64,000 nt of DNA from Zygnema circumcarinatum SAG 698-1b (GCA_037447605.1 CM074817.1:620001-684000), one strand, 5' to 3'; numbered from the stretch's first letter, positions 25,945 to 50,809 are shown. The notes: generated by a model from the letters alone, not told the origin. Numbers and translations are program-made.

Positions 25945-28900
25945 TCAGTACGGGTACTCGCCGTCGTAGTTCCCGGGGGGGTCGTAGTTGCACGCCCACA
26001 CGGTCCCCCCGTCGTCGCACGTCCCCATCGCGCAGCCCACGCGCGTGGTGGCCCGCCACACCACCTGCACCCACCGCCGCCCTCCCGCACTCGCATGCTT
26101 CAGCCGTCAAGAGATTGAGAAGCAGCGGAGGTCGAGAGCACGAGATGGCTCGCTGTGGCCTCCCTCCCCCCCCCCCCCCTCCCGCCAGCCATCCATCCAT
26201 CCATCCAGACCGACCTGCGTGTAATGCCCGCAGTTGGCCCAGTTGCCCGTGCTGCAGCCGTCCGGGAACACGGCATAGTCGTAGTATTGGCGCTCGCCCA
26301 CCCACGCCGCCACCGCCATGGCGCAGGTGGAGTCGCCGCCGTTGGCGTAGAGGTTCTGGCCGTAGGGGTTGTCCGGCGTGTGGTACATGTCGCCGTTGCA
26401 TCTCCCCTCGCTCGCCAGGAGGTCCACCCAGTCTTGAGCCGCGCTCGCGACTGCTCCGACCTCCATGGCCCCCCCCCACAGTCAATAGCACAACCACAGA
26501 CAGTGCCCCCCACCTTTCATGGAGGACCGACTGCAAAAATAACGTGATGGCACTGGGGTTCAAACTCAGCGGACGTGCAAATGCGATTGGTTCCAAAGCA
26601 TAATCAGTTAATATCAGCGTGCAGAAGGCGATGCCATGCCATGCCATGCCATGCCATGCCTCTCAATTAATCAAGACATGCTCGTTGCCGATGCCCACCG
26701 CGCGCCGCCATGCCGCCATGCACGCGCGAGGCGTGACCGGACGGAATGTACCTGCATCGCTCCACGCGAGGGGCCCGACCCCCACCAGCCCGCGCGCCTC
26801 GTTGTGGCCCGCCAGACAGTCTGCGTGCGCGCCATCTGCACCCGCCATTGCGCCCACATAAAGCGGAGAAAAGGCGCAACTCAGGCGTGCATCTTCGAAA
26901 CGTTTTCAACACTTAATACTCTTGCAGTTTCTTTAACCGGGGTGCTTCGAGCAGGAGGCATCAAGAGGAGAAGTATGCTGGACAGCCACGAGAGTGATTA
27001 TCTTGGAGTCAAAGATTACCCAAAACATAGGATTGTGCAAAAAAAAAAGGGAGAGTCCGTCGATGACTCACTAGATGGAGGAGGTGACGGCAATCGGCGT
27101 GGCGGTGGGGGGCTCTTCCTCATGGAAGGAGGAGGTCTCAATTGTTTAGGCGGAGGAGGACGCTTTGGCAGAGGAGGAGGAGACTTGGAAGGAGGAAGTG
27201 CCGCACACGCAGTTCCTGACGCGATACAGCGACCGTAGCAGGCGGTGTAGCCCTGCGAACAGATGCAGGCGGCCCCGCAGCCATTTGCTTGACACGTGGA
27301 CGAGCTGGGGCAGGTCACCTGGGAACAAGGATCACACACTGCGCGAAAAAGCGCACACAAACTCGGCTTAGGCACTATAAGTTACTTTTCCAATATTCGG
27401 CTCGTCATTCATTCTCTCAGATTACATCAAGAAAAGGTCATGGAGGCAGGTGGAGCTGTGCGGGGAGGAAGTGCCTATACTACAGCAAATGATCTGTGGG
27501 TTTTAACAACTAAAAGGGCGTGAGAAAGGGCTTCACCTTTGCCGGGTGTCGTGCAGCTGATGGAGTACACGCCTGTGTCAGGGCGCAAATCCCTGCAAAA
27601 AGAGACCAGTCATAAGTTCTGAAGGATTGGGCTTTCGACGATAAGCAAGAGGGGGTGGAATTAGTCACAGGGTTTGAGTTTTTTTCCATTTTAACCCCAG
27701 AACTCTAAAAGTATAATCAACTTTGAATCCCCTACCACGCAATCCCGAAACCTTCTCAGACACTACGGGTTTCTGTTGAAGTGTACCCGAATGAGTAGTC
27801 GTAATATTGGAAGTTCGTTGGGTCGGTATTCTCCCAGCCGCCGGGAATTTCTGTCCAGTAATAGCCTACATCCTTGCAGCCATAGCCAGACCAAAACAGG
27901 ATTTTTCCGCAAATGACATGGTTTGGCTTGCCATCTTGCACATTCCATTGGATCTTCATCGATGCCAGGGAGCCACTGATGGGGCTGCTGAGGTTCAGGC
28001 ACTCCATGTTGGGCAGAGGAGCCGTGACCACTCGAGATTCACCGCGGTACGACGTCGCGGAATAAAGGGTTAAGACTGTGCCCACTGTCACCGTTGACGG
28101 ATATACGACAACAGTCCGGTTCACAGGTGGAGCTGCATTAAACATTGAAAACCAGGGTGGCTTTCAGCGTTTGAATAAGAGCATCCAAAGCTAACCACAC
28201 TCCAAACCAATGGCCTTCCATGCCATGCGCGTATGCCTTTCTATCTAGAAACATACTCACGTGGGGAAGCGCGGGTAGCTGGAGGAGATCGTCGAGGTGG
28301 GGGAAAGCGGTTTGGAGGAGGATTCCGTGGAGTGCGAGGGAGAGGTGGGGGAGAGCGGAGCGGAGGAGGTCTGCGTGGAAGAGGAGGTGTCCGAGGGGGC
28401 GGTCCCTTGAGAGGCGGCGGGCGGCGGGGAGGGGAAGGGCTTGGGGCGGTGCACTGCTGGATGGGCGCGATGCAGCGGCCCTGGCAGGCTTGGTAGCCGC
28501 TGTCGCAGACGCAGATGGCATCGCAGCCGTCCGCTCTGCATGTCGATTTAGTGGGGCACTCGATGTTGGAGCATGGCTCGCATACTGCAATCAAGGAGCA
28601 CTTTCCACGCTTCAGAGTGTAACTGGGTTTATTTATTTCCGTTGTGTTAATAACTGCAACTTAAATTAGAAGAAAGAAAACCTGCCCTTGGTGTCTGTAA
28701 GATTTCCTTCTACGTTTTCACCTGGATCGTCGCAGCTTATAGATTGCACGTTTGGGGAGTCACTCAAGTCGCTACATGCACACAAGGAGCACACAAGCCA
28801 GCAGTTGGGTTAAGCGCTGCTGCTCGTCTTGAACTTGCCAAGACCTGGGCAAAGGGAAGTAAATCAATGCAAGAATTGGAAAAAGGGAAAAGATTATATT

Positions 28901-30395
28901 GTGAAGTGATATTCAATCACGCGAAATTATATTTACCACGCAAAAACAGTCGACAATGTCTGTTTAGTAGAAATAGTAAGAAATTATTTATGGAACCCAA
29001 TTTGTATGTCATCTGTCGCTCTACTGCCCATGATTTACATCAGGGCTGTTGCTTTGAACCTGTTTGCTTCAAAATATACGAAAGGTTAGAAGGTACTTCT
29101 CTGTAACCCAATGTCGCTTTTCTTATTGCAGCATGCAAGGACTGGAAATTGATTGTACTGCAGACGGGGATCTATAGTTTTATGGTTGTTGGGGTTTTGC
29201 CGGTTTTAGTAAGTAAAACTTTTCCGTCCAAGGTTTAAAACTTTCTCGTCGAGGCACTAGGAAGAGAAGGCGCACTATCCTATGTCTCTCACAATAGTGA
29301 AAGATGAACATCATGTCTCCTGTACTTCTTATAGAAAACGTTTCGACTGGTTGGAGGGATATGAGACGTGAAGCCTACGAAAGCAATGGTCGATGTTTGA
29401 TGTTGATTGTAGCATGATCGCATGCGAAATCAAATTGGAAAGGCAGACCACCATACGATGAACTGCTGTTTAGCTGTTTTATCGCACGACTGCATATCGA
29501 ACTGCGGGTGTTTGAGTGCTTTCAAGTTCGTAATTTTGGGTGACCCAAAAAGTGATGCCTTTCCCTCCAACCAACAACTTACTCAAACCAGTAATCTTCG
29601 TAGTCGAATTTTGACGGGTCCGCATTCTCCGCATCTCCAGGAATCTCCACGTAATAACCTCCATTGTTTTGCCCGCAAGCTGGGGCAAACCAGAAGGAGA
29701 GTACGCCGCACACCGCGTGGTTGGGTTTGCCATCGTCGACGTTCCACACAACTTGTAGGGAGAGCAAGGAGTTGTTGTACGGCCGGGAGAGCGCAAGGCA
29801 GCCTGGCTCTGGAAGCGGGGCGCGGGTCACCAAAGGAGTGCCGGCGAAGTCGAGTTTGCTGTAGAGCGTTAGCTGCGTTCCTACCACCGCCTTCAAGGGG
29901 CGGCTGACTACCACGTCACTACCTGCACAGTGGAAAGCCAAGGACATGTGTGTTTGTGTGCGTTTCTAGCGAGCAGGCGTGTGTGTCTGAGCGTTAGAGT
30001 GTAGGTGTGTATGTGCGTGCGTGAGAGAGAGAAGAGAGAGAGAGAGAGATGTAGAGAGAGAGAGAGACAGCACACCAGAGGCAGCAAGATGAACAAGCGC
30101 TCCTTCGCCTGTACCCAAAAGCGCGTCCTGCCGCGTGCCCTGCCGCACCCACAGAGAGAATTCAGATTCCCCTGGAGCTGTCACTAGAGGCACAGCCCAT
30201 CCTCTTCCTACCACCATGACGGGGCGGGGCGCTCACCGCCTCCGCCGGGACCGCTACGCGCACCGCCCGCCTCGCGCGCTTTCCGGGCAGCCCCCGCCCT
30301 GCGCCCCCTGGGGGCGCCGCCCCTTCAGCGGGCGCGAGCAGCACGGAGAAGACGAGCGCCATGGCCACGAGGAGCGCCGCGCACCGCCGCGCCAT
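25945..30395 (-). CDS. Modular secreted protein A: SP - [betagamma-crystallin/MiAMP1-like - 10-Cys EGF-like - Pro-rich] x2 - CAP (PR-1-like); 11 exons, 677 aa
   Basis: Exons 30395-30237, 30127-30076, 29922-29583, 28771-28722, 28584-28261, 28132-27787, 27592-27537, 27338-27072, 26835-26752, 26450-26215, 26064-25945 sum to 2034 nt, all GT-AG and in frame. SP MARRCAALLVAMALVFSVLLAPAEG. CAP: [61 protein letters not shown]. Confidence 0.85.
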
Positions 30396-49900: not shown

Positions 49901-50809
49901 ATATATATATATATATATATATATATATATATATATATATATATATATACATATATATATATATATATATATATATATATATATATATATATATATATAT
50001 ATATATATATATATATATATATATATATATATATATATATATATATATATATATATATATATATATATATATATATATATATATATATATATATATATAT
50101 ATATATATATATATATATATATATATATATATATATATATATATATATATATATATATATATATATATATATATATATATAGGTATATATATAGATAGAT
50201 ATATAGATAGATAGATAGATAGATAGATAGATAGATAGATAGATAGATAGATAGATATATAGATAGATAGATAGATAGATAGATAGATAGAGAGAGAGAG
50301 AGAGAGAGAGAGAGAGAGAGAGAGAGAGAGAGAGAGAGAGAGAGAGAGAGAGAGAGAGAGAGAGAGAGAGAGAGAGAGAGAGAGAGAGAGAGAGAGAGAT
50401 GGAGCAAAGAGAGTATGTCGCCGCGAGCGAGTAGGAGGGGAGAGGACACGCACCAGGGGTAACAACACGCGCTAGGTCCACTCCCATCCTCAGCCGCAGA
50501 CTCTGCTCCGCCCCAAGGAAGACGCGCCCCCTCTGACCGTCAGACGCCCCCCCGCAGGCCCCCCCTCCCCCTCCTCCTCCCTCCCAAGGCACGTGGCGGG
50601 CGCGGCTCTCACCTCCTCCGGCGGAATATGGACCAGCACCGGCTTCCCGGAGAGCCCTGCGCGTGGCGGCACACGCCAGCGGTCAGCCTCGCCCGACCGA
50701 CAAGAACGGAGCAGTGTGCGTGCGACACGTGTTCGCGGAGCTCACCGTGGACATTGCAGATGAGCAGCGCGCCGAGAACAACGAGGAGCGCCGCTTCTCC
50801 GACCGCCAT
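40942..50809 (-). CDS. Modular secreted protein C: SP - crystallin-like - EGF-like - long Pro-rich stalk (about 280 aa) - [CAP - short Pro linker] x2 - CAP; about 1010 aa; one splice acceptor damaged, so it may be a pseudogene or carry an assembly error
   Basis: Exons 50809-50746, 50656-50613, 50502-50454, about 45998-45674, 45410-45355, 45198-44221, 43952-43872, 43694-43459, 43339-43114, 42831-42751, 42555-42320, 42200-41975, 41692-41612, 41416-41181, 41061-40942. Close paralogue of gene B, including about 330 bp of 3' flank (31110-31440 vs 40620-40940). Confidence 0.75.
40960..44290. repeat. 1139-bp tandem duplication of the three CAP exons: two near-identical units plus one more diverged unit
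   Basis: Equivalent splice acceptors at 41061, 42200 and 43339 (spacing 1139 and 1139). Units 1 and 2 differ by very few substitutions, introns included. Confidence 0.92.
46034..50399. repeat. 4.4-kb compound microsatellite (GA)n/(AT)n/(AGAT)n filling intron 3 of gene C
   Basis: Direct reading: (GA)n 46034-46322, (AT)n to about 47570, mixed AGAT/GA/AT blocks, a second (GA)n-(AT)n block at about 49130-50180, (AGAT)n(GA)n to 50399. Confidence 0.97.

What the first reader, a model, noticed from the sequence alone, without database searches (positions are those of the whole stretch)
25945..50809. Tandem family of modular secreted proteins fusing crystallin/MiAMP1-like, EGF-like, HRGP-stalk and PR-1 CAP domains
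Hand splicing gives three in-frame, head-to-tail paralogues with architectures SP-(X-E-P)2-CAP (A, 677 aa), SP-(X-E-P)2-CAP (B, 795 aa) and SP-X-E-P-(CAP)3 (C, about 1010 aa). Land-plant PR-1 proteins are usually small single-domain intronless proteins, some with extensin or kinase fusions. I do not know of this four-module combination. CAP domains bind sterols/lipids and are antimicrobial in PR-1, and the X domain resembles antifungal betagamma-crystallin-fold proteins. The inference is a wall- or mucilage-tethered, multivalent defence or adhesion protein system under copy-number diversification. ORF finders miss it because the modules are split over 11-15 exons.
Basis: partly seen in the sequence, partly recalled or inferred. 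Interest (0 to 1): 0.9.

Follow-up and report, generated by a model that had tools for sequence, protein, structure and literature searches.

The report
Modular secreted PR-1 proteins, algal

Summary
Three minus-strand, multi-exon paralogues lie at 25945-30395 (A), 31439-35803 (B) and 40942-50809 (C).

For gene A, single spliced RNA contigs of 2.4-2.5 kb in four runs join the X, E and P exons to the CAP exons through GT..AG introns. B ((X-E-P)2-CAP) and C (X-E-P-(CAP)3) are homology models only. The N gap (38833-38842) lies between B and C and touches no exon.

- **CAP** is PR-1-type: it passes Pfam's CAP threshold and its best solved relatives are plant PR-1 proteins.
- **X** has no Pfam family. 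A confident model (pLDDT 87) matches almost only betagamma-crystallin domains, at modest scores.
- **E** is homologous to EGF-like repeats of Closterium proteins.
- **P** is an SPPP-rich or basic Pro-rich stalk.

X is rare: 58 cluster representatives among 1.84 billion, and every named source is a zygnematophyte. CAP is its commonest partner (11 of 42). The family therefore exists beyond this genome, always as "hypothetical" proteins, and I found no paper on it.

Function (a wall- or mucilage-bound CAP display for defence or adhesion) is inferred, not shown.

The parts
25945..30395 (-). Gene A, 11 exons, 681 aa: SP-(X-E-P)2-CAP
   Evidence: Spliced RNA contigs in 4 runs give 9 GT..AG joints. 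The CDS was assembled and is open.
30237..30395 (-). A exon 1: start codon and signal-peptide-like N-terminus
   Evidence: Hydrophobic core with Kyte-Doolittle score 2.9 over 12 aa; no later TM-like segment. The exon end is set by the RNA joint.
29583..29922 (-). A X1 domain exon (betagamma-crystallin-like)
   Evidence: Alignment A1; the lower boundary is an RNA joint.
28261..28584 (-). A E1 (10-Cys EGF-like) plus P1 (basic Pro-rich) exon
   Evidence: RNA joints on both sides; hhalign to Closterium EGF repeats, probability 96%; composition.
27787..28132 (-). A X2 domain exon; this is the sequence that was modelled
   Evidence: AF2 pLDDT 87.2; fold matches to crystallins.
27072..27338 (-). A E2 plus P2 exon
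   Evidence: RNA joints; alignment A3.
25945..26835 (-). A CAP/PR-1 domain in three exons (26835-26752, 26450-26215, 26064-25945), ending in [15 protein letters not shown]-stop
   Evidence: Pfam PF00188 at 22.1 bits against a cut-off of 21.1. Best solved relatives are plant PR-1 structures 9lyt and 1cfe. RNA joints.
31439..35803 (-). Gene B, homology model, 764 aa (5' exons provisional): SP-(X-E-P)2-CAP
   Evidence: tblastn with A; GT..AG junctions with the same phases as A.
40942..50809 (-). Gene C, homology model, 981 aa (5' exons provisional): SP-X-E-P-(CAP)3
   Evidence: 88-94% nucleotide identity to B including introns. 31-mers held by RNA-sized runs.
40942..44231 (-). Three tandem CAP units of gene C (1139-bp repeat); the inner units end ...GQYPY and run on into a 37-aa Pro-rich linker
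   Evidence: the repeat finder gives 97-99% over the 300-nt core. Whole units: cap2 vs cap3 99.7%, cap1 vs cap2/cap3 about 91-92%. Open through all units.
44221..45198 (-). C E module plus 268-aa SPPP-rich stalk (21 SP3+ motifs, no Tyr)
46034..50399 (.). About 4.4 kb of (AG)n/(AT)n microsatellite inside intron 1 of gene C
   Evidence: Tandem Repeats Finder; composition. The flanks are homologous to B's exon 1 and intron 1.
38833..38887 (.). Assembly gap (10 N) plus poly-G run, between B and C
   Evidence: Sequence. No family exon lies between 36100 and 40900.

Best explanation
The locus holds three paralogous genes for secreted, extracellular-matrix proteins of a family so far seen only in zygnematophytes (conjugating green algae).

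Each protein has:
- a signal peptide;
- one or two cassettes of a divergent betagamma-crystallin-fold domain (X), a short Cys-bearing linker, a 10-Cys EGF-like module (E) and a Pro-rich or hydroxyproline-type stalk (P);
- one (A, B) or three (C) PR-1-type CAP domains that end in the CNYxPPGNYxGxYPY tail of plant PR-1.

Shown here: the gene structure of A, the module identities, purifying selection on X and CAP between A and B, and the recurrence of X with CAP in other zygnematophytes.

Inferred: the proteins are chimeric hydroxyproline-rich glycoproteins. The stalks act as extended, glycosylated spacers set in the wall or mucilage. The X and E modules bind matrix glycans or partner proteins. 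The CAP heads are displayed at the free C-terminal end, where they could bind sterols or lipids of invading microbes. Because the tail is intact, they could also release a CAPE-like peptide.

The modules sit on symmetrical phase-1 exon sets. That explains how cassettes and CAP units were duplicated and lost: C is a recent B-like copy that lost the second cassette, lengthened its stalk and tripled its CAP unit.
For: Gene structure:
- One transcript joins all modules of A, and the 681-aa frame is open.

Secretion:
- All three proteins have a hydrophobic N-terminal core, no later TM-like segment, and end at the PR-1 C-terminus.

CAP:
- Pfam CAP is above its cut-off on the CAP exons.
- The CAP domains are 50-53% identical to CAP domains of X-bearing relatives.
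- The CAP of a Closterium relative (P0001) scores 73 bits against Pfam CAP.
- Plant PR-1 structures are the best solved matches, aligned to the very last residue.
- The GHYTQVVW, CNYxPxGN, H/QNxxR and GQNL motifs are present.

X:
- It has no Pfam family.
- The AF2 model has pLDDT 87.
- 21 of the top 25 structural matches are betagamma-crystallin superfamily domains at Z 5-6.
- Crystallin or I36 clusters also lead in Foldseek and the Atlas, at TM 0.5-0.58.

E:
- hhalign gives E 2e-9 to Closterium repeats that pass Pfam EGF models, with identical Cys spacing.

P:
- The stalks are 48-62% Pro, and C's stalk has 21 SP3+ motifs.

Selection and history:
- dN/dS is 0.24-0.25 for both X and CAP between A and B.
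- 11 of 42 X-family representatives carry CAP.
- Exon phases were computed.
- B and C are 88-94% identical in nucleotide sequence, including introns.
Against: - No localisation, glycosylation, binding or expression-condition data exist.
- B and C have no splice evidence.
- The fold match of X is below the level the aligner's own notes call safe (Z under 8). No sequence profile links X to crystallins, and the crystallin Ca-binding motif is absent in all 41 family members.
- The stalks have no Tyr cross-link motifs, and A's stalks are short and basic, so covalent wall anchoring is unproven.
- One CAP tetrad Glu is Gln (GQNL), and B and C have QNxxR in place of HNxxR.
- The X domain of C evolves at dN/dS about 1.2 and has lost a conserved Gly and Trp, so that copy may be decaying.
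Confidence: 0.6

Rival explanations
1. The same proteins are structural or adhesive matrix components rather than defence proteins. They would cross-link wall or mucilage polymers, build the zygospore wall, or mediate partner contact during conjugation. X would be the adhesive or assembly module and CAP a protein-protein interaction head.
For: - Non-lens betagamma-crystallin domains among the structural matches include the spore-coat Protein S, the cyst protein spherulin 3a, the perithecial protein APP and the adhesion molecule DdCAD-1.
- Yeast Pry3 is a wall-bound CAP protein that affects mating (PMC7340583, listed).
- X is also fused to Phi_1/EXORDIUM wall-growth proteins.
- A globular head on a Pro-rich rod is the usual design of algal matrix glycoproteins (established knowledge of volvocine HRGPs).
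Against: - There are no expression data from conjugation or zygospore stages.
- The CAP domain keeps the PR-1 motifs and the CAPE-type tail, and is under strong constraint.
- The crystallin Ca-binding motif used by Protein S and DdCAD-1 is absent.
Confidence: 0.3
2. Gene C is not a working gene. Its (CAP)3 array and its 4.7-kb microsatellite-filled first intron would be assembly artefacts, or the copy is a decaying duplicate.
For: - Cap2 and cap3 are 99.7% identical.
- 4.4 kb of (AT)n/(AG)n lies in intron 1.
- A scaffold gap with poly-G lies 2.1 kb away.
- The X domain of C has dN/dS about 1.2, with 14 of 20 assignable changes on the C lineage, including a conserved Gly and Trp.
- C's splicing was not observed.
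Against: - All 13 modelled exons are open, with GT..AG sites.
- The three CAP units differ at a few sites rather than being identical. Those changes are mostly synonymous: between units of C, 2-4 synonymous against 1 non-synonymous; B vs cap3, 3 against 0.
- At 7-12% divergence from B, most 31-mers should be specific to C, yet 25-45% of them are held by transcriptome-sized runs.
Confidence: 0.2
3. The X/E/P exons and the CAP exons belong to separate genes that only look fused.
For: None found. Land-plant PR-1 genes are usually small single-domain genes (established knowledge).
Against: - Joints 26835>27072 and 27338>27537 link the CAP exons to E2/P2 and onward within single contigs in four runs.
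- The frame is continuous.
- The same fusion is annotated independently in Closterium genomes.
Confidence: 0.03

Closest known systems
Land-plant PR-1 (tomato P14a, PDB 1cfe; basic PR-1, PDB 9lyt)
   Same: The CAP domain is the same type. Plant PR-1 structures are the best solved matches. The alignment runs to the last residue and includes the CNYxPPGNYxGxxPY (CAPE-type) tail.
   Different: Plant PR-1 is a single domain of about 135 aa, usually from an intronless gene. Here CAP is split over three exons and sits behind 530-620 aa of X, EGF-like and Pro-rich modules (A, B), or is repeated three times (C). B and C have QNxxR in place of HNxxR.
Closterium hypothetical proteins GJP43638.1 (NIES-68), GJP85133.1 (NIES-67) and CAI5982680.1 (NIES-64)
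   Same: True family relatives with the same X domain, the same EGF-like repeat spacing and the same PR-1-type CAP (50-53% identity). All are secreted-looking.
   Different: The order is SP-EGF-X-EGFn-CAP-EGFn-X, with CAP in the middle and X at both ends, many EGF repeats and no long Pro-rich stalk. The sources give them no name or function.
Unnamed transcript-derived proteins P0011 and P0020 (X-Pro-rich stalk-CAP) and P0019 (X-EGF2-CAP)
   Same: Closest in design: X, then a stalk or EGF, then a C-terminal CAP ending in ...GNYxGEYPY.
   Different: They have a single cassette and either a stalk or EGF, not both. The organisms are not known.
Fungal wall-associated CAP proteins (yeast Pry3; Ustilago UmPR-1La)
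   Same: A CAP domain joined to a long, probably glycosylated low-complexity region that holds it at the cell surface (PMC7340583 and PMC10505147, abstracts).
   Different: In Pry3 the CAP domain is N-terminal, followed by a Ser/Thr-rich region and a GPI anchor. Neither has crystallin-like or EGF-like modules, and the fusions arose independently.
Betagamma-crystallin superfamily (Protein S, spherulin 3a, Ciona crystallin, AIM1, MiAMP1)
   Same: The predicted double Greek-key fold of X. An aromatic-x4-aromatic-x-Gly signature is present in part of the family.
   Different: - No sequence-profile link and no Pfam Crystall or I36 hit.
- No Ca-binding motif.
- X has three conserved Cys of its own.
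- It is longer (about 100-110 aa).
- MiAMP1 matches less well than canonical crystallins.

Membership tests
CAP superfamily, PR-1 type (PF00188) | Match to the Pfam CAP model above its gathering score | tested here: met
   CAP exons score 22.1-24.2 bits against a cut-off of 21.1, although each exon is only part of the domain. The CAP of a Closterium relative (P0001), about 50% identical to the window's CAP domains, scores 73 bits.
CAP superfamily, PR-1 type (PF00188) | CAP1 (GHYTQVVW) and CAP2 (CNYxPxGN) signature motifs | tested here: met
   Present in all five CAP domains.
CAP superfamily, PR-1 type (PF00188) | CAP3 (HNxxR) and CAP4 (G[EQ]N[ILV]) motifs | tested here: inconclusive
   A has HNEAR; B and C have QNAAR. 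All have GQNL, the permitted Gln variant.
CAP superfamily, PR-1 type (PF00188) | Nearest solved relatives are plant PR-1 rather than CRISP, GAPR or Pry | tested here: met
   For the window's CAP exons, the middle exon matches only 1cfe and the last exon matches 9lyt best. For the CAP domain of a relative, 9lyt and 1cfe rank first (E 1e-28 and 8e-24, against 1e-16 for Pry1).
CAP superfamily, PR-1 type (PF00188) | Alpha-beta-alpha sandwich fold; sterol or lipid binding | not tested
Betagamma-crystallin superfamily | Double Greek-key fold | tested here: inconclusive
   The model has pLDDT 87. 21 of the top 25 VIA matches are crystallin-superfamily domains, but at Z 5-6, below the aligner's caution level of 8. 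Foldseek E is 0.7 or higher. Atlas TM is 0.5-0.58.
Betagamma-crystallin superfamily | Sequence-profile match (Pfam Crystall, Crystall_3 or Inhibitor_I36, or solved crystallins) | tested here: not met
   No Pfam family on X in the window or in 42 relatives. Profile searches of the PDB found no crystallin.
Betagamma-crystallin superfamily | [YFW]x4[YF]xG Greek-key signature and the Ca-binding N/D-N/D-x-x-S/T-S motif | tested here: inconclusive
   The first-key signature is present in some window copies (A-X1, A-X2, B-X1, B-X2 and C-X each show it once) and in 14 of 41 family members. The second key reads aromatic-x4-Cys in 34 of 41. The Ca motif is present in 0 of 41.
MiAMP1 / killer-toxin-like antimicrobial proteins | Compact Greek-key domain of about 76-88 aa, closest structural neighbour, family cysteine pattern | tested here: not met
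   MiAMP1 gives Z 4.4, WmKT 3.1 and the Streptomyces antifungal protein 3.0, all below canonical crystallins. X has only three conserved Cys.
EGF-like domains | Six-Cys pattern with CxC and match to an EGF model | tested here: inconclusive
   Direct Pfam hits are below threshold (EGF_Mua-3, E 0.01-0.85). hhalign gives 96% probability (E 2e-9) to Closterium repeats that do pass EGF_MSP1_1, with identical spacing C-x4-C-x5-C-x8-C-x-C-x10-C plus two extra Cys.
Extensin-type hydroxyproline-rich glycoproteins | Repeated Ser-Pro(3-5) motifs | tested here: met
   B has 13 SP3+ motifs and C has 25 (21 of them in the main stalk). A has only 3, and its stalks are basic (K+R 23-24%).
Extensin-type hydroxyproline-rich glycoproteins | Tyr cross-linking motifs; Hyp-O-arabinosylation | tested here: not met
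   No Tyr in any stalk segment. Glycosylation cannot be tested here.

The most novel reading that the evidence does not exclude
X-CAP would be a conserved two-module functional unit of the sister lineage of land plants. An uncatalogued crystallin-fold recognition module would target or regulate a PR-1 head on the cell surface, and the small single-domain PR-1 of land plants, with its CAPE tail, would be the stripped-down descendant of such modular wall proteins. The X partner would then offer the first handle on what PR-1 heads act on. The fast-evolving X of the newest copy (dN/dS about 1.2 beside a CAP at about 0-0.1) would mark the recognition side of an arms race or of mate recognition.
Probability: 0.15. 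Interest if true: 0.85.

Novelty: new variant of a known kind. Interest (0 to 1): 0.62.

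Why it matters
PR-1 is one of the most used markers of plant immunity, yet its mode of action is still debated.

This locus shows that in conjugating green algae, the closest algal relatives of land plants, a PR-1-type CAP domain with the complete C-terminal CAPE-type tail is built into large modular surface proteins. 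Its repeated partner is a domain that no family database names.

That gives three things:
- concrete, testable partners for a PR-1 head;
- a new lineage-restricted extracellular domain family, which also pairs with EXORDIUM-like proteins;
- a clean plant-lineage example of module gain and loss through symmetrical phase-1 exons.

It also shows that gene prediction in these genomes misses or leaves unnamed a whole class of wall proteins.

Tried and rejected
- A first AF2 run on X with only the five window copies gave pLDDT 43 and was discarded. The 41-sequence alignment fixed this.
- Profile searches of solved structures with X found nothing meaningful.
- Direct Pfam searches of E gave only sub-threshold EGF hits.
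- Rfam found nothing in the window.
- For B and C, many alternative 5' splice combinations fit. I kept the simplest one, the conserved GTGAGC donor after the signal peptide joined to the phase-1 acceptor of the X exon, and marked it provisional.
- The window's own proteins did not appear in the 1.84-billion-representative library. The best hit was 111 bits at 50% identity or less, so no public gene model could be used.
- I did not send full spliced proteins to the sequence tools, because they have no reference form. Exon-level references were used instead.
- Literature searches for this architecture in Zygnematophyceae, Closterium or Penium, and for CAP domain combinations, found no description.
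- The scan's earlier-notes search by words returned nothing.
- The first attempt at the second run search failed (not completed) and was repeated successfully.

Full report
**1. The observation**

The window is GC-rich (about 50-60%), apart from a 4.4-kb (AG)n/(AT)n block at 46034-50399. Six-frame ORFs on the minus strand showed three kinds of repeated coding piece:
- CAP-like pieces;
- a beta-rich unit of about 110 aa (X);
- a Cys-rich unit followed by Pro-rich sequence (E and P).

Pfam put the CAP-like pieces in PF00188, above its gathering score. It found nothing for X and nothing for E/P.

**2. The assembly gap**

The N run at 38833-38842 is followed by about 45 G. In the gene models below it lies 3.0 kb upstream of B's start codon (35803) and 2.1 kb downstream of C's stop codon (40942). 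tblastn with protein A found no family exon between 36100 and 40900. So the gap breaks no reading frame. It does leave open whether C really lies next to A and B on the chromosome. I could not test continuity, because the single read-laying run was used on gene A.

**3. Gene A is one gene**

Transcriptome-sized runs of the same organism hold about half of the 31-mers of 25900-30800. Laid on that stretch, contigs from four runs in three studies gave nine joints. All nine read CT..AC on the plus strand, which is GT..AG for a minus-strand gene.

Single contigs of 2460-2529 nt carry, in order, the last CAP exon, the two other CAP exons, E2/P2, a small linker exon, X2, E1/P1, a second linker exon and, in two of the runs, X1.

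The one intron the tool skipped lies in a (CT)n repeat. I placed it at 29923-30075, one of only two GT..AG choices that keep the frame open.

**4. Genes B and C are homology models**

tblastn with A located all modules of B and C. I then chose GT..AG sites that reproduce A's junction peptides and intron phases.
- **B** reads SP-(X-E-P)2-CAP, 764 aa.
- **C** reads SP-X-E-P-CAP-P'-CAP-P'-CAP, 981 aa, with its start codon at 50809.

The 5' exons are provisional.

The body of C shares 25-45% of its sampled 31-mers with RNA-sized runs. At 7-12% divergence from B, most 31-mers should be specific to C, so this fits transcription of C. Its splicing was not seen. B's expression was not tested.

**5. 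What the modules are**

*CAP.* All five domains carry GHYTQVVW, [15 protein letters not shown] and GQNL. A has HNEAR; B and C have QNAAR.
- The middle exon of A matches only tomato PR-1 P14a among solved structures.
- The last exon matches a basic plant PR-1 (9lyt) best, aligned to its final residue.
- The full CAP domain of a relative ranks the two plant PR-1 structures well above yeast Pry1, snake CRISPs and GAPR-1.

So this is a PR-1-type CAP domain with the CAPE-type tail intact.

*X.*
- Five copies in the window are 48-65% identical to A-X2, the first copy in the alignment.
- A profile of them, run against 1.84 billion cluster representatives, found only 58 proteins at E of 1e-3 or better.
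- A model built from a 41-sequence alignment reached pLDDT 87. A first model from five sequences had been useless.
- In a Foldseek-independent search of 48,161 solved chains, 21 of the top 25 matches were betagamma-crystallin superfamily domains at Z 5-6. They included the Ciona crystallin, beta-B3, gamma-B, spherulin 3a, geodin, AIM1, nitrollin, Protein S and Neurospora APP. MiAMP1 scored 4.4 and the Williopsis killer toxin 3.1.
- Foldseek against the PDB and a shape search of the ESM Atlas also put crystallin and Inhibitor_I36 entries first, at weak scores: E of 0.7 or more, TM 0.5-0.58. The feature search had pointed the same way.

Against membership:
- No sequence profile links X to crystallins.
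- The Ca-binding motif is absent in all 41 members.
- The first Greek-key signature is kept in only 14 of 41.

My reading is a divergent, uncatalogued domain with a betagamma-crystallin-like double Greek-key fold. It is closer to canonical crystallins than to MiAMP1.

*E.* This is a 46-aa, 10-Cys unit. Pfam gives only sub-threshold EGF hits. Its six core cysteines have exactly the spacing of the repeats in Closterium relatives. Those repeats pass Pfam EGF models (EGF_MSP1_1, 3.5e-22), and a profile-profile comparison gives 96% probability, E 2e-9. E is EGF-like with one extra disulfide pair.

*P.* The segments are 48-62% Pro.
- In B and C they are SPPP-rich. C's main stalk is 268 aa with 21 SP3+ motifs.
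- In A they are short (35-54 aa) and basic.
- None contains Tyr.

*Ends.* All three proteins begin with a strongly hydrophobic core, have no later TM-like segment, and end at the PR-1 C-terminus. This fits soluble or matrix-bound secreted proteins. No signal-peptide predictor was available, so secretion is an inference.

**6. Relatives elsewhere**

Every X-family protein with a named source comes from Zygnematophyceae: several Closterium strains, Mesotaenium endlicherianum and Netrium digitus. The rest are unnamed transcript or metagenome contigs. One weak multi-stretch hit from Paulinella is probably a repeat match.

Of 42 representatives scanned with Pfam, 11 carry CAP, 7 carry Phi_1/EXORDIUM, at least 5 carry EGF models, and none has a family on X itself.

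Examples:
- GJP43638.1 and CAI5982680.1 read SP-EGF-X-EGFn-CAP-EGFn-X.
- Two unnamed proteins read X-Pro-rich stalk-CAP.
- One unnamed protein reads X-EGF2-CAP.

None is more than about 53% identical to the window's proteins, so this genome's own products appear to be absent from the public protein collections searched. All relatives are labelled hypothetical or unnamed.

Full-text searches found no paper on this architecture. A Penium secretome paper that I checked does not mention CAP or crystallin proteins.

The organism is not identified here. Its nearest relatives suggest a conjugating green alga.

**7. History and selection**

A and B share no detectable nucleotide similarity. B and C are 88-94% identical, introns included.
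- C matches B's exon 1, first intron, X1, linker and E1/P1, and then B's CAP unit three times. It lacks the second cassette.
- The inner CAP units end ...GQYPY and continue in frame into a 37-aa piece that resembles the end of B's second stalk. That is what unequal crossing-over between a CAP end and a stalk exon would produce.
- Cap2 and cap3 are 99.7% identical.

Between A and B, both X and CAP show dN/dS of 0.24-0.25, so both are constrained coding modules.

Between B and C the picture differs:
- The CAP domains differ by 3 synonymous and 0-1 non-synonymous changes (dS about 0.03).
- The X domains differ by 42 non-synonymous and 11 synonymous changes (dS 0.16, dN/dS 1.2).
- 14 of the 20 assignable X changes are on the C lineage, including a conserved Gly and Trp.

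The uneven dS suggests gene conversion or a later origin of the CAP part. The X of C is either drifting or diversifying; these data cannot tell which.

Module boundaries fall on phase-1 introns. X plus linker, E/P, and the whole CAP unit of C are each symmetrical 1-1 sets.

**8. Mechanism**

Shown:
- one transcript for A;
- the module identities described above;
- constraint on X and CAP;
- a recurrent X-CAP pairing across the lineage.

Inferred: these are chimeric hydroxyproline-rich matrix proteins in which stalks space globular modules.
- X, and perhaps E, would bind wall or mucilage glycans or partner proteins. In bacteria, crystallin-fold domains often accompany glycoside hydrolases and carbohydrate-binding modules.
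- The C-terminal CAP heads would be exposed, to bind microbial sterols or lipids or to release a CAPE-like peptide.

I put the extracellular-matrix reading at about 0.85. Within it, defence stands at about 0.45 and adhesion, wall assembly or conjugation at about 0.3. The probability that C is partly an artefact or a decaying copy is about 0.2.

**9. Verdict**

- The domain assignments are largely right.
- The MiAMP1 and antifungal emphasis is not specifically supported.
- The architecture is not unique to this genome, but the family is unnamed and, as far as I could find, undescribed.

I rate it a new variant of a known kind: the CAP/PR-1 superfamily with an uncatalogued partner domain. Interest is moderately high for plant-immunity and plant-evolution specialists, limited by the complete lack of functional data.

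Noticed in passing
window 22510-23079 (-): An ORF with a Pfam xyloglucan fucosyltransferase (GT37, PF03254) match, E 1.4e-12, about 2.9 kb downstream of gene A. It is a wall-polysaccharide enzyme gene next to the wall-protein cluster.
   Followed up: no
window 54058-54867 (+): An ORF with a lunapark zinc-ribbon match (PF10058), E 3.5e-11. It is probably an exon of an ER-shaping lunapark gene.
   Followed up: no
window 46034-50399; also 30001-30077 and about 35300-35400: The same (CT/AG)n microsatellite sits in an early intron upstream of the first X exon in all three paralogues (A's second intron, B's and C's first). In C it has grown, together with (AT)n, to about 4.4 kb. This is either real expansion or an assembly problem.
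   Followed up: partly
window 38843-38887: A run of about 45 G directly after the N gap, typical of a contig-end sequencing artefact. The join of the two scaffold parts is unverified.
   Followed up: partly
proteins P0004, P0005, P0009, P0021, P0044 (Netrium, Mesotaenium): The X domain also occurs at the C-terminal end of Phi_1/EXORDIUM-like proteins, after a Pro-rich linker (7 of 42 family representatives). This is a second undescribed fusion of this domain.
   Followed up: partly
window 28772-29582 (intron of gene A): Low-depth RNA contigs (depth about 5-10, against 313 for the exons in run X1) cover most of the 811-nt intron. This is retained-intron or pre-mRNA signal, or DNA carry-over.
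   Followed up: no
gene B X1 (34945-35284) vs gene C X (45674-45998): dN/dS is about 1.2 and dS 0.16 in X, against dN/dS of about 0-0.1 and dS 0.03 in the CAP exons of the same gene pair. The history is mosaic (gene conversion over CAP, or relaxed or positive selection on X).
   Followed up: partly
window 51541-52908 (+): A 455-aa ORF, the longest non-repeat ORF in the window, with no Pfam family.
   Followed up: no
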